This document shows positions 596 to 12,337 of a stretch of DNA of 64,000 nt, piece after piece; position 1 is the stretch's first letter; each line of letters begins with the position of its first letter. The DNA is taken from positions 434,001 through 498,000 of the forward strand of contig NW_003314271.1 in NCBI RefSeq assembly GCF_000143415.4. Reading direction: 5' to 3'. A program made the translations under genes and the position numbers. Below the pieces are notes generated by a model, which did no database searches, was not told the DNA's origin, and worked only from the letters and a program-made list of their open reading frames with translations. Source of the DNA: Selaginella moellendorffii (taxonomy: Eukaryota; Plantae; Lycopodiophyta).

Positions 596-1225
596 CGTTT
601 CGGCTTAATGCTAGGTTAGCAATGAATCTTGCTCTTAATCCAGCCCCGCATTTGATGCGAGTAGAGCTAAGTTCGCTTGGTTTCTCTCTCTTCTTGATCT
701 TTCTTTTTTTCTTTTTTGTTCCCAGACAAGGAAGCAGGAGTGTAAGTTCTTTAACCCTTTTCAAAAATGATGTACGAAGAACAAAAGAAGCTTGTCCATG
801 GACCAAAGTTTCTGGCCCGCTACGAGGACGAACTCGCTCGCGAGGGGTGCACACAAACCAAGAGACAGAGGGACGTGCCCACGAAGCCAACAAGAGGCTC
901 GAAAAGGTGATCAGTTTCTTTCTAGCCATCTACGTGACCGGGGGTGTGTCCGAGCTCGGCCCTGAAGGTTCAATTCTAGTAGAAATATTTCGAAGGTCCG
1001 GCGTCTGAAGCATTCCCATCGGATGACTGTTGTCTCCCGCACCACAATGGCTCTTAAGCTGCGATCGAATGCCCGACCTTTTGCCACGACGCTCTTCTTT
1101 TCAAAGCATGGCAAACTCTGAAAAGCAACACGTCCTGAATTATTGTTTAATTTACATTAGGTACTCGAGCAAGAAAATTCAACCCTGCTTTAGATCGATA
1201 CCTAGATCTAGGTGGCTTGGATACA

Positions 1226-2434
1226 ATGGCCAATCGACTCGCATCATCTCTGGCAAGCAAATGGAAGCTAGTCCAAGGCCAGACATTCTGGAAAGGCATG
1301 CTTGGGAATCCCATGGACGAAACTCTCTGCCAGGAGCTGATCCGCTACGGCCAGCTAATCCAATGCGTGGTGGATGGATTCAACGAAGTCAAGGCATCTC
1401 GCTGGTATGGCCTGTGCATTCACGGCAAGTCACAGCTATTCCACAAGCTCCAGATGGGCAACACCGGCTACACGATCCACAAGTACATCTATGGCAGCAC
1501 CAGAGATCGCCCCCGTCTAATCACAGGTACTGGTACCACCAGGGAGCCCCACACTGGATGGTCTGGCTATCTTGCCATGTCGAACGACCAAGAAAGCTTG
1601 AGATTGGGACGAAGAGACATCCTCCTTGCGTTTCGGGGCATGGAGCTCACTCGGGAGTGGTCGGAGATCGACTCACTCTTGCCCCTTCCTCGGCTGTATC
1701 CAGCGAAACCGGCAGTGGCGGCCGGAAGCTCGTCGCCCGTGTTGGTGTCCGACCATGTAGCCTCACTCTACACTCACTGCTATCCAGGCGAGGAGTTTGG
1801 AAGCACTTGTGTCCGGGATCAGATTGTTTCCACGCTCAGGGGCCTCATCGACGCAAACAGGGACGAAGAGCTGAGCATCACGGTGGCCGGGCATAGCTTG
1901 GGAGGTGCGCTTGCAACCCTGTGTGCCTACGACATTGTCAACGAGAGTGTCAACGCAGCTCCCAATGGTAAGATGATCCCGGTGACCGCATTTGTCATTG
2001 GTGGTCCCCAAGTTGGCAACTATGCGTTCAAGGTGGCGGCGGAAGGGTTGCAAAGCCTGCGAGTCCTCACCGTGGTAAATCCCTTGGATGTGGTTACCAA
2101 GCTCCCGGGAAACGCTCTGGGTTACGTATCTCACATTGGGGTGCTGCTGGAAGTCGTCCACACCGGCTTGGCTTATCTTAAGCACAAACCCGAGGATCTT
2201 GCAGTGCATGACTTGCAGCTCTACTTGCATCTGATTGGCAACAAAGTGGAGCCTTTCAAGTATCACCAGCTTGAGCTTCTGAACAAGTCTGCGGATCTGC
2301 TGGCGAATCCGATCGTTCCGCCCAAGTGGTGGTATGTCCGAGGTGTGGATGTGATTGTCAGTGTGGACGAGGAAACGGGGAAGCTGTGTTTCAAGCTGAC
2401 AAATGTCTCTCCAAGTGATCCAGAGTACAGTTGA
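1226..2434 (+). CDS. Phospholipase A1 / lipase class 3 (DAD1-like family), intronless
   Basis: ORF with W.G.L..P.DE.L.QELIRYG, W.GYLAMS, RLGRRDILLAFRG, lipase motif GHSLGG, GGPQVGN, VVNPLDVVTKLPG, VHDLQLYLHLI and LLNKSAD...VPPKWW. Confidence 0.92.
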   Translation: MANRLASSLASKWKLVQGQTFWKGMLGNPMDETLCQELIRYGQLIQCVVDGFNEVKASRWYGLCIHGKSQLFHKLQMGNTGYTIHKYIYGSTRDRPRLITGTGTTREPHTGWSGYLAMSNDQESLRLGRRDILLAFRGMELTREWSEIDSLLPLPRLYPAKPAVAAGSSSPVLVSDHVASLYTHCYPGEEFGSTCVRDQIVSTLRGLIDANRDEELSITVAGHSLGGALATLCAYDIVNESVNAAPNGKMIPVTAFVIGGPQVGNYAFKVAAEGLQSLRVLTVVNPLDVVTKLPGNALGYVSHIGVLLEVVHTGLAYLKHKPEDLAVHDLQLYLHLIGNKVEPFKYHQLELLNKSADLLANPIVPPKWWYVRGVDVIVSVDEETGKLCFKLTNVSPSDPEYS

Positions 2435-2817
2435 GTTCATGGATGGACTTTTATGATCAAGCTGTGTTCATGGATGATTGTATTCTTATTCCACTACTGC
2501 TATATTCCAGTTTGCAAACCTGGAAGTTCTGACTTTGAACTATGCTCAAGGAAGAAGCAGCGACTCCAGACGCTCTAGCTTCGTCTGGATTGCAGCACTT
2601 GTGCTACATCCGGATTCCGGATGAGAATGACTCAATAAAAATGGTACACTATAGTCTTTGAACTGAAGCTCCAAGTTACTCTCATCTTTGTTTCCAAGGC
2701 ATGGGAAACCTGAAAAGCAACTCACTGACTTACCACTCTTTGACCTGCATTTTCTCTGTTTTTTACTACCAGCGCAGTCTTGCAACCCTAGATCTACCTT
2801 GCATAGGATCCTAACAT

Positions 2818-3990
2818 ATGCAATCGGTCCACATCATCCTTGGCAAGCAAATGGAAGCTAGTCCAAGGCCAGACGTTCTGGGAAGGCATGCTTGGGAATC
2901 CCATGGACGAAGCTCTCTGCCAAGAGCTGATCCGCTACGGCCAGCTCGTCTAATCCGTGGTGGATGGATTCAACGAAGTCAAGGCATCTCGCTGGTATGG
3001 CCTGTGCGTTCACGGTAAGTCACAGCTATTCCCCAACCTCCAGATGGACAAAACCGGCTACACTATCCACAAGTACATCTATGGCACCACCAGAGATAAC
3101 GATCGCTCTCGTCTTACCACAGGTACCACCAAGGAGCCCCACACTGCCTGGTCTGGCTACCTTGCCATGTCCAATGACAAATAAAGCTTGAGATTGGGAC
3201 GAAGAGACATCCTCCTTGCGTTTCGGGGCATGAAGCTCACTCGGGAGTGGTCGACGCGCTCTTGCCTCTTGCTCGGCTGAATCCAGCCAAACCGTCAGTG
3301 GCGGCCGGAAGCCCCTCGCCCGTGTTGGTGTCCGACCATGTATCCACACTCTACACCCATTCCTATCCAGGTGAGGAATTTGGAAACAATTCTGCCCGGG
3401 ATCAGATAGTTTCCACGCTCAGGAGCCTCATCGATGCAGACAGGGACGAAGAGCTGAGCATCACGGTGGCCGGGCATAGCTTTGGAGCTTCGCTCGCGAT
3501 CCTGTGTGCCTACGACATTGTCAACGAGAGCGTCAATGCAGCTCACAATGGTAAGGTGATCCCGGTGACCGCATTTGCCATTGGTGGTCCTCAAGTTGGC
3601 AACCATGCGTTCAAGGTGGCGGTGGAAGGGTTGCAAAGCCTGCGAGTCCTCACCATGGTATGGATATGGTTACCAAGCTGCCGGGAAACGCTCTGGGTTT
3701 CGTATCTCACATTGGGGTGCTGCTGGAAGTTGTCCACACCAGGTTGGCTTATCCCAAGCACGAGGGTGTTCTAGTGCATGACTTGCAGCTCTATTTGCAT
3801 TTAATAGGCAACAAAGTGGAGCCTTTTAAGTATCACTTCTGAACAGGACGACAGATCTGCTCGCAAACCCAATCGTTCCGCCCAAGTGGTGGTATGTCCA
3901 AGGTGTGGATGTGAATGTCACTGTGGACGAGGAAACAGGGAGGCTACGTTTCAAGCTGACTAATGTCTCTGCATGATACAGAGTTTAGCT
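2818..3990 (+). pseudogene. Decayed tandem duplicate of the phospholipase A1 gene
   Basis: Colinear with 1226-2434 but has in-frame TAA at 2951-2953 and 3182-3184, and frameshifting deletions near 3253, 3660 and 3836. Confidence 0.93.
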
Positions 3991-4496
3991 AAGGAACTTT
4001 CATGATCAAGCCAGTTTGTATTCTCATTACAGTCTCTCGAATCCGAGTTTGCAGATTCTATCAGCTTGTCTTGGCTTCGCTGGCGTCAAATCTTTGCTCA
4101 AGGAATCAGCGGTCTTTGATAGTTTGTCTGCTCCATCTGATGAAGGTTACAAAGATGTGAAATCACTGAGCAGAGTTCTCAGTCGGGCTTTAAGGCCGCC
4201 TATCTTTTCGCATTGTCTCTCCCAGTATTGCTCAATTTCTTGGATCTCAAATTACACCTCTTCTATTTTACTTCGATCAAGCTTGTGACCAGGCATGATC
4301 GGTCACAGAGCTCCATTTCAAGAAATCTTTTGTGCAAGAAGAAATCTTTTGCAGGAGGTGTGTTTCTGGCACCCCCAAGCTAAAGTATTCATTTTTTTAA
4401 AAAACACTGACTTCCACAGGGGGCACCCCAAGTGCCGCCACTATCTAAACCCCTTGGATAGTTCAAGCGTCCACTGAAACACTACTCTTAGACTAG

Positions 4497-5938: not shown

Positions 5939-6351
5939 AAGGTTCCTATAGAATATCTTTTGAATTTAATTCTCTAAAGTATAAACTGTCTCCAAAGATT
6001 TATGTTTTAGTTGAGCTCAGTGCTGTTCTTACTAACCGTGTTATCACGTCTATGATCAAACATGTAATAATATGTTAGTAAGACTTTTGGATGTGGATGT
6101 CTGGCTGCCTCCACTTGGGCGCTACAAGACCCTCAAAAACATTATTAAATGACACAGATGGCTAAAGTCAAGAGGTGGGGTACATGATCCCACACTATCT
6201 CCGTGGGTCGCAAAAGTGGGAGTTATTGCAAAGTTGGCGAAGTGTTCAACGAAGAGAATACCACAACACCACGGATCTAACGTGGGCCGGGTGAGTTTCA
6301 AAATATATACGCACAGATTGTCCATCTCAATAGATTTTTCGGTTCTTGAGG

Positions 6352-7725
6352 ATGGAGACCAAGCACTTGCAATCTCGTGTCGCCATAGTCACCTTTCCAC
6401 TACATGGCCACCAAAATCCGATGATGCGATTGGCGTGTCGCCTTGCAAGCTTGGGAATCCGGGTCACATTCTTCACCAGTAAATGGTTTGAGAAATCCGC
6501 AAAACCATCCAAGGCCTACGAGGAGCTCATCAAGGTGGTGGGCATCGAGGGAGGATTGGATGACAATCAGCTCAACAGCAGCAACGATGCCATCGCCGAT
6601 GTGTTGCGAGAATCCGAGAAGATGAGACAGCCCTTTGAGAAGCTAGTGCTCGCCGATGAGGAGGAGAATGGGACGCCATTCGCGTGCTTGATTGTCGACG
6701 CGTGCTTCCCATGGCTTCCGGAAGTTCGTCACAGGTTTGTGGCTGGATTCTGGGCGAGCACCGTTGCTTGTGCGAGTGTCATGGTTACGCTGCCAGACCT
6801 CGTAGCGAAAGGATACCTCCCAGCCCAAGGTGAGAAGTTGCTTTCTCCAGGAGCAAATGGACTAGCTCTAGCAGGCATTCCATTCTACTTCCACACCGCC
6901 AACGAGGAGGATCTCAGGATGAGCATCGAGTTTGGGCAGGTGCTTCTTCATCCTGGGATGAGCTGCCTGCTGCTAAACAGCTTCGAGGGCGCGGAGAAGC
7001 AGAGAATCCAAGAGCTCCAGAGCCTGCTGCCTTGTCCGTGCCTCCCAGTGGGTCCTCTAATGGCGACTGACCAGAATGGGATCGCTCGACACGCTGATCG
7101 TTGCCTCGAGTGGCTCGACGAGCAAGAGCCCAAGTCCGTGGTCTACGTCTCCTTTGGAACGCTCGCGTATGTCTCCGCGAAGCAGTTCGAGGAGCTCGCG
7201 CTGGGGCTGGAGTCGAGTGGAGCGTCCTTCCTCTGGGTGGTCAGGCCTACACTCGTTGACAAGCAAGAAGACGTTGAGATCTTCCTCGAGGAGTTTCGAA
7301 AGAGGACGAGCGCGAAAGGTTTGATCGTAGCTTGGGCGAATCAGCTCCAAATCCTGGCTCATCCATCGGTTGGATTGTTTCTCTCGCACTGCGGCTGGAA
7401 CTCGACGTTGGAGGCTGTGTGGAGCGGCGTGCCCGTGCTGGCCTGGCCCCTCTTTGACGAGCAGAACGTTTGCGCTCGCTATCTCGTCCACGACTGGAAG
7501 GCTGGCACTCCGATCAGCGACGCTGCACTGGCGAAGTCGGGCGTGCTTGTAAGTCGGAAGGAAGTCCGAGATGGCGTAAGATCCGGCCTCCGGGACGAGT
7601 CTCTTCGCTACAGCATGAAGCGAGCGTCCAAGGCTGCTCGCGAGGCTGTCCAGCCAGGAGGCTCCTCGTTTTCCAGCATCGAAAAGCTAGTCCTTGCGAT
7701 TAAAGCCGGATCATGGAGCTCGTAG
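6352..7725 (+). CDS. UDP-glycosyltransferase (family 1 UGT), intronless
   Basis: N-terminal FPLHGHQNPM with catalytic His; complete PSPG box WANQLQILAHPSVGLFLSHCGWNSTLEAVWSGVPVLAWPLFDEQ; C-terminal PGGSS. Confidence 0.95.
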   Translation: METKHLQSRVAIVTFPLHGHQNPMMRLACRLASLGIRVTFFTSKWFEKSAKPSKAYEELIKVVGIEGGLDDNQLNSSNDAIADVLRESEKMRQPFEKLVLADEEENGTPFACLIVDACFPWLPEVRHRFVAGFWASTVACASVMVTLPDLVAKGYLPAQGEKLLSPGANGLALAGIPFYFHTANEEDLRMSIEFGQVLLHPGMSCLLLNSFEGAEKQRIQELQSLLPCPCLPVGPLMATDQNGIARHADRCLEWLDEQEPKSVVYVSFGTLAYVSAKQFEELALGLESSGASFLWVVRPTLVDKQEDVEIFLEEFRKRTSAKGLIVAWANQLQILAHPSVGLFLSHCGWNSTLEAVWSGVPVLAWPLFDEQNVCARYLVHDWKAGTPISDAALAKSGVLVSRKEVRDGVRSGLRDESLRYSMKRASKAAREAVQPGGSSFSSIEKLVLAIKAGSWSS

Positions 7726-7919
7726 AGTTCTTTGAAGTATCGTGAATTCTTCACTCCCTTCTCACACTGGATCATCGTCTCCAAACACCATACAGAAACT
7801 TCTTTCAACTCCATTGATTTCATCAAATTCGTTTCGTTTTACTGGTCTTGAATTGAGAACGTTTGGTTTTCTTCTCGAGGGGTATAGCTTAGAGCACTCC
7901 TTCGTCTTCGTCTTCCCAG

Positions 7920-9113
7920 ATGGAGGTGGAGTCGCCGGCGCATCTCTCCGCGGCGTGCGAGCGCCTGTTGAGCTCGGGCCTCTACTCGGACATCACTTTC
8001 CAGACGGGGGACGACTCCACCCCCGCCCACCGCTGCATCCTCGCGTCCCTCTCGCCAGTGTTTAGCACCATGCTCTCGGCCGGCCTCCAGGAGCAAGAGA
8101 CCGCCACGATCGCCATCACCGACATGACCACTCCACAGCTCCGGGCCTTCCTCCTCTTCCTCTACACGGGTCGCCTGGAGCAGCAAAAGGTGGCGGAGTC
8201 GGGCTTGGCCGTGCTTGCCGCCTGTCACAAGTACTGCCTCCCGGGACCTCTCATGAACGCTTGCGTCGCCGGCCTGTGTCGATCCATCACCTGCGAGAAC
8301 TGCCTCGGCCTGCTGGAGCTCGCGGATCTCTACGGCCAGGAGGCGCTGGCTGCCAAGTGCCAGAGCTTTGTCACCAGTCACCTGTCCGAGTTCCTCGATT
8401 GCAATGGAAAAGCGCTCGTCTCAAAGAATGCGGAGCTCCTGCTGGACCTGGTGAGAGATAGACTGCCACCGCTTGGCTTCCGGGAGATCAAGCTCTGGTT
8501 CCGACGATACAACACCCAGAAGGTCCGCTTGCATAAGGTCGTTCTTCCAGCCGGTAGCACTGTCGCGGAGCTTGTGTCCGAGGTGAATAAGCAGCTCAAC
8601 CGGCCGAACAAGCTCAGGGTGTCGCTCCGGATTCTCCAAGTTTTCAACCATCGGATCGGCCGCATCTTCAAGAGGAAGGATCCCATCTCGGTCATCAGCC
8701 AGGAGGAGTCGGACGGTGATGGCCTGCGAGCCGAGGAGGTTCCACCGGACGACGAGAAGTCTCTGGCTGGTAAGTCTGTGATTCACGTCCACCACTTCCG
8801 GACTGGGACCTGGTCGTATGAAGCTTTCGGAGAGCCGTTTGCAATGCACGTTCACCACCAGGAGACTCTTCGCAGGATCAAGCAGAGGATCAAGGCGAGG
8901 CTGGCTGTGTCCAACGAAACTTTTGAGAAGTGGAAGTTTGCCAAGTTCCATACGGTACCAGGCCTGAATGAATACGTTCCCCCGGTTTATCTCGACGACA
9001 ATATGCCCATGGCGGTGCTTCTGACGGTTGATGGATGCTCGTCCTCTAGAGCAATGTCAACGTTGCCTCTTGGCATCCACCACACCCAGGATGTCTTGGG
9101 GTCTTGCAAGTAG
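7920..9113 (+). CDS. BTB/POZ protein fused to a USP7/UBP12-13 C-terminal ubiquitin-like region, intronless
   Basis: N-half: YSDITF...PAHRCILASLSPVFSTML, FLLFLYTG, AACHKY, ITCENCLGLLELADLY (BTB plus BACK-like helices). C-half: LPAGSTVAELV, LRILQVFNHRIGRIF, LRAEEVPPDD, IHVHHF, FGEPF, ETLRRIKQRIKARL, FEKWKFA, LGIHH, resembling the plant UBP12/13 C-terminus. Confidence 0.8.
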   Translation: MEVESPAHLSAACERLLSSGLYSDITFQTGDDSTPAHRCILASLSPVFSTMLSAGLQEQETATIAITDMTTPQLRAFLLFLYTGRLEQQKVAESGLAVLAACHKYCLPGPLMNACVAGLCRSITCENCLGLLELADLYGQEALAAKCQSFVTSHLSEFLDCNGKALVSKNAELLLDLVRDRLPPLGFREIKLWFRRYNTQKVRLHKVVLPAGSTVAELVSEVNKQLNRPNKLRVSLRILQVFNHRIGRIFKRKDPISVISQEESDGDGLRAEEVPPDDEKSLAGKSVIHVHHFRTGTWSYEAFGEPFAMHVHHQETLRRIKQRIKARLAVSNETFEKWKFAKFHTVPGLNEYVPPVYLDDNMPMAVLLTVDGCSSSRAMSTLPLGIHHTQDVLGSCK

Positions 9114-9230
9114 AAAACATATCCTGCTTTCTTTTGAGTATTACAACCAATGGGTTGAGCTGACATTAAAAAAAAAACAGAGAGTTCTTGTACCCAAGTA
9201 CCTTGTGAAATTAAGCTGCTACAACGTTGT

Positions 9231-12200
9231 CTAGTGCGTCCTCGGTGTTCAACACTTCTACCAGCTCGACGTCCAAAATATCTTTCCGAGGATTAGCAGC
9301 GGCAACTATAACTCGAACGGCATCACCAGCTTCTAGCTTCACGTTGGTGCTCACCGATGTATGCAATCCCACCTGCAAGTCACATTAGCCAGCTTATAGA
9401 AAACAGGAAACACTGAAAACTTCATACCTCCTTGATGGAGACGACAACTTGTCCGTCTTTGACCCTGACTACCGACGCTTCATACAGCTCGTCCCTGGGC
9501 CGCCTCCGCAGATACTCAATAAGCCAGTACCTAGAGGACGCGTTTCCCAATTTTCTCGCCTCCTTCGTTTTCAAGTTGGCTAGCATAATCGCTGCCTCGA
9601 GCTGGCTACTGCTAAGCGGTGGAGACTTTTTGCGAAGGGCTGCTTTAACCTGTTAACCAAAACGATCACGATTTAACAAATCGTCAGTAAAAGAGTACAA
9701 GGAGAACCTGGTAGTGTGCCAACAAGTCACTATATCGTCTGATTGGAGAAGTAAACTGAACGTATCCAGGTAGGCCCAAGCTAGAGTGCTGTAGCGGTTT
9801 GGTGCAGTTCATCTCGACAGCCATGTCTGACTGTCCTCTGTATGGCAAAGCCAGAATCTTCTCGTTGCCGTAAGCAGCTATGGCCTCGCCACACAGAATC
9901 ATCATCTCTGAAACAAGTTGTCCAGAGGGACTGGTCATGTCGATCACCTGAAGCTTGATTTCGGGCTCAAACGAATCTGGATTGGTTACTTTGACTTCTA
10001 TCTGCCGAGTGGATAAATCAACTGCACCCTGTTTACAACATCCTCAAAGATCAACCACTGAAGCTAAATGAAACAACAAGCACCTGAGAAAGTCGCCATT
10101 CATAACGGAGTCGGGCAGCCTTCGCCAGCAAATTTAGCTCACGCTCTTCGTCTAGTTGATACATTATAAGCTCCGTTGCAGAGTCATACGAGAGTCGCAT
10201 CGACGGTTTTATCACTGAGCTGCATACCGAAGACTCTGCAATGCTTGAAACACCAAACTTGATTTTCCAGAGGTCCAGGTAGGCTAGCAAGCAATACACA
10301 CCTGCCATCTTTGTCGAGGATGACGGACACACTCACAGCGCAGCATTCCGTGTTCTGCCTAAGGCTCATCGGTCCAGTAGCTAAGTTCATGGGAAACATG
10401 GGAATCGTTTTCTCTGGCAGGTAAACGGTCGTTCCTCGGTGTTTTGCTTCTCTATTTAGTCTCAGGTTAGCCTAGCACAACAAATCAACACACGTGCACG
10501 CACCTTTCAATTATATGTTCCGGCTCTACCCATCTTGTCGGATCCGCAATGTGAATCCAAATTTTCACACGACCGTCGGGGAGCTCAGTCGCGCTCAATC
10601 CATCATCGATCTAGAAATGAATGTCAGGAAGCACAACGATAGACCAAAACACAAACCTCTTCAGTAGAATCTGAATCAATGGTGTAAACCTTCATGGCTG
10701 TTAAATCGACTCTAGAATCCTGATCAGACATAAAATTCCAGGCTTTAGAAAATTTAAGAATGAATAAAGCGCACCTTGTTTTGATCAAGACATGGCTCCT
10801 CTTCAAGAAGCTTTGCAGCCGCAATATGCTCGTCAGGAAAAGCAGTCGGAATTTTGGACTTTAGCAGTTCCACATTTACGTGAAACGGAAGAATACCTAT
10901 GCCGATTAAAACATCTAGAGCAGATTCAGGAGACTTCTGCTGTCCCAAGGCCTCCAAAACCTGGAATATATTAAATCAGAATCAAACTTTGATGCAACGT
11001 GAGTAGCTTACCTCTTTTGCCAAGTTCTTCTGAGTTTCATCGGCAAACGCATCTAACGCAAATTCCTGCAGAGCTTCTACGCGGGCGAGCGCGAACTTTT
11101 CCGAGGACCAACTGGTGGGAGATGGCTTTGAATCATGAGACCGTGCTAAGGCGGACTTGACCATGTTGATAAAATTCACCAGCTCCATTCGAGCGGTTTC
11201 CTCGACATTATACTGGTGTTGTAACTCCTGCACCTGATAAACAGAAAGATCAAACATGAGAGACAATGATGTCGAGCTTACCTCTGCACTAGACCGCGGT
11301 TCATAAAAGACAACAGGCCCTTTTTGCTTGCGCCTAAAGAACACTTGCTTTGAAGATAGCATACAATGCGTTGCATAGTACTCAACATGGGAAACATCCC
11401 CAAAAAGCACCTGCAATTGCGAGGCAGACGAGTCAACCATTTCAACAAAACGTCGACTCACAAACTTTGGCTAGCTTCTTTGAACTTATGGATTTCTCCT
11501 CTGACTCAACCAGCTCGTGCCATGCAATTTCTATAAGAGACAAGTCCTGCAAAACGCAAAATTGTTTCATAAGAAAAAAGTGAAAGAACAAAAAAAACCT
11601 GTATGGCTTCCGTTTGCTTCAGGAACTCAACGATGTCTTCTGGTTTAAACGTTTCTACATCTGGAACAACGTATCTTACTTTCCCAGGCTTCACCGAGTG
11701 GGAATTTCCATACTGCAAATGAGCTATAGCATTAGTTATAGAGCATACTTCTTCCAAAGCTCTGAAAGAATAGTCACCTGGTCTATGGCAATCCAGTTCT
11801 TCTTCCCTTCCGGCCTATCCACAACCGCACAAACAAGCTTGCCATCTTTTACAAGCTCTACAAGCATTCCTTTGCGAAAAATTTGATCGCCGGACGTCGC
11901 GACCTCCTCGCTCGCGCTCACTCTCAACTCTAGATACCTGCGAAGAATCCAAAAGAAACCAGCTAGAAGAAAGCAAAAGGATTCTATAGACAACGCCCAT
12001 ACCTCCCCCTGATTCTTTCCTTCTTCGTTTCTCCCGTCTCCACAAACAGACCGACAAGCTGCTTGAGACTGGCAAGGCCATCGCTCCATTTCCTACTCAG
12101 CAATCCATAGCTGCTACTCCAGGGGCCTTCAATCCCTCCCCGCATCGCCGACGAAGTCGTAAAACTCCTCCTGTTCCCTCGCCTGCCAAGCAAAACCCTC

Positions 12201-12337
12201 CGCGACGAAGAATCCCGCCGCGACGACGATACCACCCCTGCCGCCGCCACTCGATCAATGCCGCGCCCTGACGATGGCACCATCGCCATTGTCGCGTGCA
12301 GCGCGGAAGACAAGCAGGCTGCACAGAATCGCCCCAT
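9231..12337 (-). CDS. RNR1: Ribonuclease II/R (RNB domain), chloroplast/mitochondrial, multi-exon
   Basis: Transit-peptide-like N-terminus; RVDLTAMKVYTIDSDSTEE|IDDGLSA, WIHIADPT, RGTTVYLPEKTIPMFP, LVSEMMILCGE, HSSLGLPGYVQFTSPIRRYSDLLAHYQ. Confidence 0.9.

What the first reader, a model, noticed from the sequence alone, without database searches (positions are those of the whole stretch)
7920..9113. Intronless BTB adaptor fused to the C-terminal ubiquitin-like region of deubiquitinase USP7/UBP12-13
Seen: a single 397-aa ORF. The first about 180 aa are BTB plus BACK-like helices. The last about 210 aa reproduce, in order, motifs I recall from the plant UBP12/13 C-terminus (LP..STV.D, LR.LEVF.HKI.KIF, LRAEEIP, I.V.HF, FGEPF, ETL..IK.RI..KL, F.KWKFA, LGLEH). 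No USP catalytic or MATH domain is present. Established: BTB proteins are CUL3 substrate adaptors, and the USP7 C-terminal UBL domains bind partners and regulate catalytic activity. Inference: a protein-binding module of a deubiquitinase has been rewired onto an E3 adaptor, which could degrade UBP12/13 partners or act as a UBP12/13 antagonist. UBP12/13 genes are intron-rich while this gene has no intron, suggesting a retroposed chimera. I do not know this architecture from angiosperms.
Basis: partly seen in the sequence, partly recalled or inferred. Interest (0 to 1): 0.78.

Follow-up and report, generated by a model that had tools for sequence, protein, structure and literature searches.

The report
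BTB adaptor carrying USP7's last ubiquitin-like domains
The spikemoss Selaginella moellendorffii has an intact, transcribed, intron-free gene that joins a ubiquitin-ligase adaptor domain (BTB) to the last two ubiquitin-like domains of the deubiquitinase USP7/UBP12-13; a liverwort and a clubmoss share it, so it is an old, undescribed adaptor type of non-seed plants and not a recent accident.

Summary
Window 7920-9113 (+) is one 397-aa ORF with Pfam BTB (residues 15-120, E 1.4e-21) and USP7_C2 (189-366, E 1.2e-28). It has no catalytic, MATH or UBL1-3 domain.

- **BTB half:** its closest solved structure is SPOP (E 1e-16). It keeps the CUL3-contact motif (L56-Q57-E58 against SPOP M233-E234-E235).
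- **C half:** it folds as two ubiquitin-like domains (pLDDT 78). These match solved human USP7 UBL4-5 (TM about 0.7).
- **What is missing:** the protein ends just after UBL5, so it lacks the tail that in human USP7 activates the enzyme.
- **Organism:** Selaginella moellendorffii. The published assembly carries a 98% identical allele (dN/dS 0.36).
- **Transcription:** RNA contigs from four studies cover the ORF without a splice. The strand is not shown.
- **Relatives:** an exhaustive search of 1.84 billion representatives found the architecture in only two other proteins, from Riccia fluitans (liverwort) and Diphasiastrum complanatum (clubmoss). Both are single-exon with the same domain boundaries.

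The fusion is therefore ancient. It was not seen in seed plants, and I found no paper describing it.

It most likely works as a dimeric CUL3 substrate adaptor whose di-UBL end binds the target; the target is unknown. This scan had noted the same stretch once before (s1-422251).

The parts
7920..9113 (+). Complete single-exon coding sequence, 397 aa plus stop
   Evidence: ORF; same gene model in GCA_000143415.2, L001 8001-9194; RNA contigs 7812-9133 with no joint inside
7935..8279 (+). BTB/POZ domain (residues about 6-120), including the CUL3-contact motif L56-Q57-E58 at 8085-8093
   Evidence: Pfam BTB E 1.4e-21; SPOP alignment places L56/E58 on SPOP M233/E235; E58 is invariant in the three fusion proteins and at least 90% conserved in 28 BTB sequences; pLDDT about 90-96
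8301..8456 (+). Four helices after the BTB (residues 128-179): 3-box and BACK-like region
   Evidence: phmmer alignment to SPOP runs to query residue 179 = SPOP 354; helices 128-138, 141-153, 155-169, 171-179 at pLDDT 73-92; Pfam BACK is below its cut-off
8475..8744 (+). First ubiquitin-like domain (residues about 186-275), equivalent to USP7 UBL4; ends with the LRAEEVP connector
   Evidence: Pfam USP7_C2; alignment to human USP7 916-1051; AF2 model; Foldseek best hits are USP7 HUBL/UBL45
8766..9089 (+). Second ubiquitin-like domain (residues about 283-390), equivalent to USP7 UBL5; ends at LGIHH
9090..9110 (+). Short C-terminal tail (7 residues), unrelated to the roughly 25-residue tail of UBP12/13 that ends in KIYN
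   Evidence: alignment A3
9131..9201 (-). 3'-UTR intron of the convergent RNase II gene; the exon after it runs antisense into the 3' end of the BTB-UBL gene
   Evidence: joint 9130..9202 with CT..AC ends in runs X1 and X3, and a loose end in X5

Best explanation
This is a real, constrained, transcribed single-exon gene of Selaginella moellendorffii. It encodes a two-module protein. The N-terminal module is a SPOP/BPM-type BTB domain with 3-box/BACK-like helices. The C-terminal module is the UBL4-UBL5 pair of the deubiquitinase USP7/UBP12-13. Catalytic, MATH and UBL1-3 domains and the C-terminal activating tail are all absent. The gene belongs to a small, old, intronless family also present in a liverwort (Riccia fluitans) and a clubmoss (Diphasiastrum complanatum). 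Inferred mechanism: the BTB dimerises and docks on CUL3 through the conserved phi-x-E motif and the 3-box, as SPOP and BPM do. The di-UBL module takes the place of the MATH domain as the end that binds the protein to be ubiquitinated, or a regulatory partner. The architecture, its age and the sequence constraint are shown here. CUL3 binding and the identity of the ligand are inferred.
For: Domains. The BTH half matches SPOP BTB-3box-BACK at E 1e-16, and the C half matches human USP7 UBL4-5 at E 3e-9. The AF2 model of the C half (pLDDT 78, pTM 0.75) has as its ten best Foldseek hits USP7 HUBL/UBL45 structures, with TM 0.63-0.73 over about 214 columns. The best ESM Atlas match is the plant USP7-like hydrolases, TM 0.78. 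The CUL3-contact motif is conserved: L/M-x-E in all three fusion proteins. Family: of the 150 best among 1.84e9 representatives, only P0001 (allele), P0002 (Riccia, 40% identity) and P0004 (Diphasiastrum, 32%) hit both halves. All are single-exon. All start the USP7 part at the first strand of UBL4 and stop right after UBL5. They share five residues absent from all canonical UBP12/13 sequences. Their BTB domains fall in one clade (SH-aLRT 95). Constraint: the two haplotypes differ by 7 synonymous and 8 non-synonymous changes with no indel, giving dN/dS 0.36 (one-sided p 0.048), close to the neighbouring UGT at 0.30. The flanking intergenic DNA is 5-6% divergent with indels. Transcription: contigs of four runs from four studies cover 7812-9133 without a joint. 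The same runs show GT..AG joints in the next gene, so they are RNA. The contigs also carry letters of both haplotypes.
Against: No binding was tested: no CUL3 sequence was available to the complex tool. The strand of the RNA is unknown, because contigs carry no strand and the convergent RNase II transcript overlaps the 3' end. Pfam BACK is below threshold. The Selaginella C half is more similar to angiosperm UBP12/13 (34-37%) than to the other two fusion proteins (25-34%). The C-half tree has long branches and no UBP12/13 from the same species, so a single origin is likely but not proven. No ligand of an isolated USP7 UBL4-5 pair is known to me.
Confidence: 0.6

Rival explanations
1. Regulator of UBP12/13. 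The di-UBL module docks in trans on UBP12/13, or on a partner that normally contacts the enzyme's own UBL4-5. The BTB protein then either brings CUL3 to the deubiquitinase to control its turnover, or competes with the enzyme's own activating module as an antagonist.
For: The module derives from the region that regulates catalysis in USP7 (titles of 2ylm and 5jtv). In Arabidopsis, UBP12 without its C-terminal UBL region was inactive (PMC9483116).
Against: All three fusion proteins lack the C-terminal tail. From my own knowledge of the USP7 literature, that tail is the main activating and docking element. The complex prediction with the Malus UBP13 catalytic domain gave no answer, which counts neither way.
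Confidence: 0.15
2. Scaffold independent of CUL3. The BTB serves only as a dimerisation or oligomerisation module that presents two or more di-UBL units, for example as a non-degradative adaptor.
For: Many BTB proteins act without CUL3 (general knowledge). Pfam BACK is below threshold.
Against: The phi-x-E motif and the helices after the BTB are conserved, and the closest solved relative is the CUL3 adaptor SPOP.
Confidence: 0.15
3. Decaying or functionless chimera: a retrocopy fragment fused by chance, kept only briefly.
For: The gene is intronless, and the C-terminal halves evolve fast. Other captured USP7_C2 fragments exist in angiosperms, for example gag plus USP7_C2 in P0076.
Against: The ORF is intact in two haplotypes and in two other lineages that separated long ago, with both Pfam domains still above their cut-offs. 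dN/dS is 0.36, and divergence is lower than in flanking DNA. The locus is transcribed.
Confidence: 0.04

Closest known systems
SPOP / plant BPM (MATH-BTB) CUL3 substrate adaptors, and the plant At1g55760-type BTB proteins
   Same: The BTB with 3-box/BACK helices has SPOP as its best solved match (E 1e-16, 156 aligned residues). The phi-x-E motif is conserved. In the BTB tree the At1g55760-like clade sits next to the fusion clade.
   Different: There is no MATH domain. The recognition module lies C-terminal to the BTB, not N-terminal, and is a di-UBL. The gene is intronless, whereas the Selaginella At1g55760-like gene has intron(s).
USP7 (HAUSP) / plant UBP12 and UBP13 deubiquitinases
   Same: Residues 186-390 are homologous to UBL4-UBL5, the Pfam USP7_C2 region. 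Identity is 34-37% to angiosperm UBP12/13, and the fold matches at TM about 0.7 to 2ylm and 5jtv.
   Different: It has no USP catalytic domain, no MATH and no UBL1-3 (USP7_ICP0_bdg), and it lacks the C-terminal tail. It cannot be a deubiquitinase.
BTB-only proteins Mp1g19060 (Marchantia polymorpha, P0035) and O6H91_09G013800 (Diphasiastrum, P0019)
   Same: They fall in the same BTB clade (SH-aLRT 95) and are single-exon.
   Different: They have no UBL part, and no remnant of one lies downstream of the stop codon.

Membership tests
BTB-type CUL3 substrate adaptor (SPOP/BPM-like) | BTB/POZ fold | tested here: met
   Pfam BTB 77 bits against a cut-off of 20.5; pLDDT above 90
BTB-type CUL3 substrate adaptor (SPOP/BPM-like) | phi-x-E CUL3-contact motif in the alpha3-beta4 loop | tested here: met
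   L56-Q57-E58 aligns with SPOP M233-E234-E235; M-L-E in Riccia and M-K-E in Diphasiastrum; the role of the motif is from my own knowledge of the literature
BTB-type CUL3 substrate adaptor (SPOP/BPM-like) | 3-box / BACK helices after the BTB | tested here: inconclusive
   Alignment with SPOP extends to its residue 354, and four helices are predicted at 128-179, but Pfam BACK scores 15.4 bits, below its cut-off of 20.9
BTB-type CUL3 substrate adaptor (SPOP/BPM-like) | Physical binding to CUL3 | not testable with these tools
   No plant CUL3 sequence could be handed to complex prediction
MATH-BTB (BPM) subfamily | N-terminal MATH domain | tested here: not met
   No MATH hit; the BTB starts at residue 6
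USP7/UBP12-13 deubiquitinase | USP (UCH) catalytic domain | tested here: not met
   No PF00443 hit; Malus UBP13 has one
USP7/UBP12-13 deubiquitinase | MATH domain and UBL1-3 (USP7_ICP0_bdg) | tested here: not met
USP7/UBP12-13 deubiquitinase | UBL4-5 (USP7_C2) | tested here: met
   100.7 bits; fold match
USP7/UBP12-13 deubiquitinase | C-terminal activating tail after UBL5 | tested here: not met
   All three fusion proteins end 0-16 residues after the LGxxH motif; canonical proteins continue for about 25 residues to ..KIYN
BTB-USP7_C2 family (proposed here) | BTB plus USP7_C2 in one single-exon ORF, with the junction at the first strand of UBL4 | tested here: met
   Selaginella (two haplotypes), Riccia, Diphasiastrum

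The most novel reading that the evidence does not exclude
Non-seed land plants keep an E3 adaptor built from a deubiquitinase's own regulatory module. Its di-UBL end recognises UBP12/13, or a protein that normally docks on the enzyme's UBL4-5. This couples CUL3 ubiquitination directly to the UBP12/13 hub, a control layer that seed plants lost.
Probability: 0.12. Interest if true: 0.8.

Novelty: new variant of a known kind. Interest (0 to 1): 0.5.

Why it matters
BTB proteins are grouped by the domain that picks the substrate: MATH, NPH3, TAZ, ankyrin, Kelch and others. A di-UBL taken from USP7/UBP12-13 is not among the described partners. I found no paper that mentions BTB together with USP7_C2. 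The public names of these proteins are misleading: 'kelch repeat and BTB domain-containing protein 12', 'ubiquitinyl hydrolase 1' and 'hypothetical protein'. The family is kept in a liverwort and in both main lycophyte lines but was not found in seed plants. It therefore marks a piece of the early land-plant ubiquitin system that the model angiosperms cannot show. It also gives a natural, isolated UBL4-5 module for asking what that pair binds apart from its own catalytic domain.

Tried and rejected
- **Word-index protein searches:** with the whole protein, with the C half alone, and with the three-protein alignment, these returned only the allele and Diphasiastrum. They are too insensitive to count as evidence of absence.
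- **Metagenome scans:** two scans, with patterns from the whole protein and from the C half, found no relative.
- **Complex prediction:** the C half (186-397) against the Malus UBP13 catalytic domain (195-545) scored 0.00, and the verdict was 'no answer'. It is evidence neither for nor against binding.
- **Mixed alignment:** a MAFFT alignment of BTB and USP7 fragments (A2) misaligned UBL4 onto the BTB, so I did not use it.
- **Full-length AF2 model:** the model from A5 is good only for residues 1-180. Its C half is unreliable because the alignment is shallow there, so I draw no inter-domain geometry from it.
- **P0015 / P0167:** hhalign of the USP7_C2 alignment against the metagenomic BTB protein P0015/P0167 was not significant (probability 0.2), so I do not count that protein as a family member.
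- **Remnants in BTB-only relatives:** tblastn found no USP7_C2 remnant downstream of the Marchantia or Diphasiastrum BTB-only genes.
- **Contig depth:** I did not use depth from contigs to rank expression, as the tool warns against it.
- **Rejected readings:** a recent Selaginella-specific chimera (orthologues exist); an assembly artefact (two haplotypes plus RNA contigs span the domain junction at 8475); and an exon of a larger gene (no joints, and the orthologues have matching N-termini).

Full report
**1. The observation**

Window 7920-9113 on the + strand is a single ORF of 397 codons that starts with ATG. Pfam finds two domains above their curated cut-offs. BTB covers residues 15-120 (E 1.4e-21). 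USP7_C2 covers residues 189-366 (E 1.2e-28). BACK is only a sub-threshold hit at residues 128-162. No USP catalytic, MATH or USP7_ICP0_bdg domain is found.

Against solved structures, residues 21-179 align best with human SPOP (BTB, 3-box and BACK; E 1e-16). Residues 213-353 align with human USP7 residues 916-1051, which lie in UBL4-UBL5.

**2. Organism, locus and gene integrity**

The only near-identical database protein is a Selaginella moellendorffii entry named 'kelch repeat and BTB domain-containing protein 12' (P0001, 98% identity). Its gene lies on GL377579.1 of GCA_000143415.2, between the same neighbours: a UDP-glycosyltransferase upstream and an RNase II gene convergent downstream. 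Window and scaffold are 97.3% identical over 12.7 kb with 40 gap openings. I therefore read them as two haplotypes or accessions.

Within the ORF there are 15 single-base differences and no indel: 7 synonymous and 8 non-synonymous. Nei-Gojobori dN/dS is 0.36 (one-sided binomial p 0.048). The neighbouring glycosyltransferase gives 0.30. The flanking intergenic stretches are 5-6% divergent and carry indels, against 1.3% inside the ORF. The numbers are small, but they point to purifying selection.

**3. Transcription**

I laid Logan contigs of four runs from four studies on window 6400-12300. All four runs show a series of short joints with CT..AC ends (46-71 bases skipped) in the RNase II gene. 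These are GT..AG introns on the minus strand, so the runs are RNA even though their records do not say so.

- In three runs one contig covers 7812-9133 (or to 9130 or 9137) with no joint.
- In the fourth run two contigs cover 6400-8509 and 8520-9370.
- The junction between the BTB half and the USP7 half (about 8475) is therefore spanned by RNA contigs, and there is no intron in the ORF.
- Eleven of the 'other letters' in the contigs are exactly the differences between the two haplotypes, in mosaic. RNA from both alleles is probably present.

There are limits. Contigs carry no strand. Coverage is continuous from the glycosyltransferase through to RNase II. A minus-strand 3'-UTR intron of RNase II (9131-9201) joins that transcript to sequence antisense to the last bases of the ORF. 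Transcription of the locus is shown. Transcription of the plus strand is likely but not shown.

**4. Relatives**

The word-index searches were nearly blank. Because the claim rests on absence of relatives, I ran the exhaustive HMMER search of 1.84 billion cluster representatives. Seven proteins scored below E 1e-30. Only three proteins align over both halves:

| Protein | Species | Length | Identity | Query residues aligned |
|---|---|---|---|---|
| P0001 | Selaginella moellendorffii (the allele) | 397 aa | 98% | 1-397 |
| P0002 | Riccia fluitans | 433 aa | 40% | 9-365 |
| P0004 | Diphasiastrum complanatum | 379 aa | 32% | 8-355 |

A local BLAST of both halves against all 150 listed hits confirmed that no other protein matches both. 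Pfam calls BTB plus USP7_C2 in both P0002 and P0004. Their source records are KAL2652883.1 (Riccia fluitans, Marchantiales) and KAJ7523272.1 (Diphasiastrum complanatum, Lycopodiales). Both genes are single exons: 1302 and 1140 bases for 433 and 379 codons plus stop.

The remaining hits to the C half are UBP12/13 proteins or fragments: ten of the listed representatives (eight from angiosperm records, two without a species record) plus three angiosperm members of their clusters. The hits to the N half are ordinary BTB proteins. I found no paper that holds both 'USP7_C2' and 'BTB', and none of the BTB or UBP12/13 papers I listed describes this architecture.

Caveats on distribution:
- Representatives are clustered at 50% identity, so close relatives of these three proteins are hidden.
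- Only predicted proteins are searched.
- No plant genome collection was available for a tblastn survey.

**5. One origin or several?**

In favour of one old fusion:
- In alignment A3 all three proteins begin the USP7-like part at the first strand of UBL4, without the preceding YYEVLDIPLPELQ connector.
- All three stop 0-16 residues after the LGxxH motif that closes UBL5. Canonical UBP12/13 continue for about 25 residues to ..KIYN.
- Five positions (R195, P229, I238, R245, D254) are identical in the three fusion proteins and absent from all ten canonical sequences.
- The BTB halves fall in one clade (SH-aLRT 95) with two BTB-only proteins, Marchantia Mp1g19060 and a Diphasiastrum paralogue, and one metagenomic protein. 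The At1g55760-like group lies next to this clade.
- In the C-half tree the fusion proteins form one side of a branch against the canonical proteins (96/94).

Against over-reading this:
- That branch is nearly trivial without UBP12/13 from the same species and without an outgroup.
- The fusion branches are very long.
- The Selaginella C half is closer to angiosperm UBP12/13 (34-37%) than to the other fusion proteins (25-34%). I attribute this to fast evolution of the captured module against a slowly evolving enzyme.

I put a single origin at about 85%. On the usual land-plant tree, that places the origin before liverworts and lycophytes diverged.

The BTB-only clade mates are also single-exon and carry no USP7_C2 remnant downstream. 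The Selaginella At1g55760-like gene has intron(s). The recipient BTB gene was thus probably already intronless. Capture of a 5'-truncated UBP12/13 retrocopy, which would carry exactly the 3' end of that gene, is a reasonable but untested route. One hit, P0076, combines a copia-type gag domain with USP7_C2. This shows that such fragments do get moved.

**6. Structure**

With alignment A3 (14 sequences), AlphaFold2 gives the C half (residues 181-397) a mean pLDDT of 78 and pTM of 0.75, as two beta-grasp units. The ten best Foldseek matches in the PDB are all USP7 HUBL or UBL45 entries (2ylm, 5jtv, 9a9w, 9k2w and others). Their E-values are 3e-13 to 3e-11, with TM 0.63-0.73 by query over about 214 columns. 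UBL1-2 entries and di-ubiquitin or ISG15 follow far behind. In the ESM Atlas the nearest clusters are plant USP7-type hydrolases, TM 0.78.

A full-length model (alignment A5) is confident for residues 10-170 (pLDDT about 87-96). It shows four helices after the BTB core (128-179). Its C half is poor for lack of alignment depth, so I draw nothing from the relative position of the halves.

**7. How it most likely works**

Shown: a SPOP-like BTB with following helices; the SPOP M233/E235 positions kept as L56/E58, and as M-x-E in both orthologues; and a di-UBL of USP7 type without the enzyme's other parts.

Inferred from what is established for SPOP, BPM and other BTB adaptors: the protein dimerises, binds CUL3 through the BTB and 3-box, and uses its other end, here the di-UBL, to bring in a target. 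I give this 0.6.

What the di-UBL binds is open. In USP7 this pair, together with the C-terminal tail, activates the catalytic domain (titles of 2ylm and 5jtv). In Arabidopsis, UBP12 lacking its UBL region was inactive (PMC9483116). A regulator-of-UBP12/13 reading is therefore attractive. However, the tail is missing in all three fusion proteins, and the one complex prediction I could run gave no answer. I give that reading 0.15. A CUL3-independent scaffold gets 0.15, and a functionless relic 0.04.

**8. Comparison, novelty and score**

The protein works like a BTB adaptor. It is not a member of the MATH-BTB subfamily (no MATH) and not a member of the USP7 family (no catalytic domain). It is a new domain combination within a known kind of system. 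The sequences already sit unrecognised in public databases under misleading names. The combination is confined, as far as these searches see, to three non-seed plants.

I rate it a new variant of a known kind, with interest 0.5. The architecture and its age are solid and undescribed, but there is no functional evidence yet and it does not bear on a long-standing question.

The scan had noted this same stretch once before (s1-422251). A neighbouring report (s1-368775) had already named the genome as S. moellendorffii, and my searches agree.

Noticed in passing
window 9131-9201 (- strand), RNase II gene about 9211-12335: The convergent RNase II gene has an intron in its 3' UTR (joint 9130..9202, GT..AG on the minus strand, seen in two runs and as a loose end in a third). 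The following exon runs antisense into the last bases of the BTB-UBL ORF, so the two genes have overlapping 3' ends.
   Followed up: partly
L004 8210-9316, L005 8001-8864, L006, L007 (metagenome contigs); proteins P0015, P0167: A 287-aa protein from ENA/Logan/JGI metagenome assemblies (19 cluster members) sits in the same BTB clade. Its roughly 100-residue tail looks like a single ubiquitin-like domain (MKVWSAGTIDNIKADIKNVL...), but it has no Pfam hit and no significant hhalign match to USP7_C2. It is single-ORF, and the organism is unknown.
   Followed up: partly
P0076 (539 aa) and P0006 (Papaver californicum, 406 aa): Other captured USP7_C2 fragments exist: one protein combines a copia-type gag domain, a ubiquitin-like stretch and USP7_C2, and another holds two USP7_C2 copies. 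The 3' part of UBP12/13 genes seems prone to duplication or capture.
   Followed up: no
P0001, P0002 (database names): The public names are misleading. The Selaginella protein is called 'kelch repeat and BTB domain-containing protein 12' but has no Kelch repeats. The Riccia protein is named 'ubiquitinyl hydrolase 1' in UniRef but has no catalytic domain.
   Followed up: yes
L008 3001-3591 (Marchantia polymorpha Mp1g19060) and L009 3001-3669 (Diphasiastrum): BTB-only, single-exon relatives lie in the same clade as the fusion proteins, and no USP7_C2 remnant lies downstream. They either never had the UBL part or lost it cleanly.
   Followed up: partly
P0002 residues 1-51 (Riccia fluitans): The liverwort orthologue has a 51-residue N-terminal extension rich in K, R, E and G (..KRKEGDLDGGGGGGKRKERGG..) that resembles a nuclear localisation signal. 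It is absent from the two lycophyte proteins.
   Followed up: no
window 6346-7725 (+) and 7726-7919: A UDP-glycosyltransferase gene ends only 195 bases upstream of the BTB-UBL start codon. RNA contigs are continuous across this spacer, and in one run a single contig runs from the glycosyltransferase into the BTB half.
   Followed up: no
window 1096-4258 against L001 1274-4189: BLAST shows cross-matching blocks at 86-94% identity around the Lipase_3 gene. This suggests tandem duplicated segments that differ between the window and the published scaffold.
   Followed up: no
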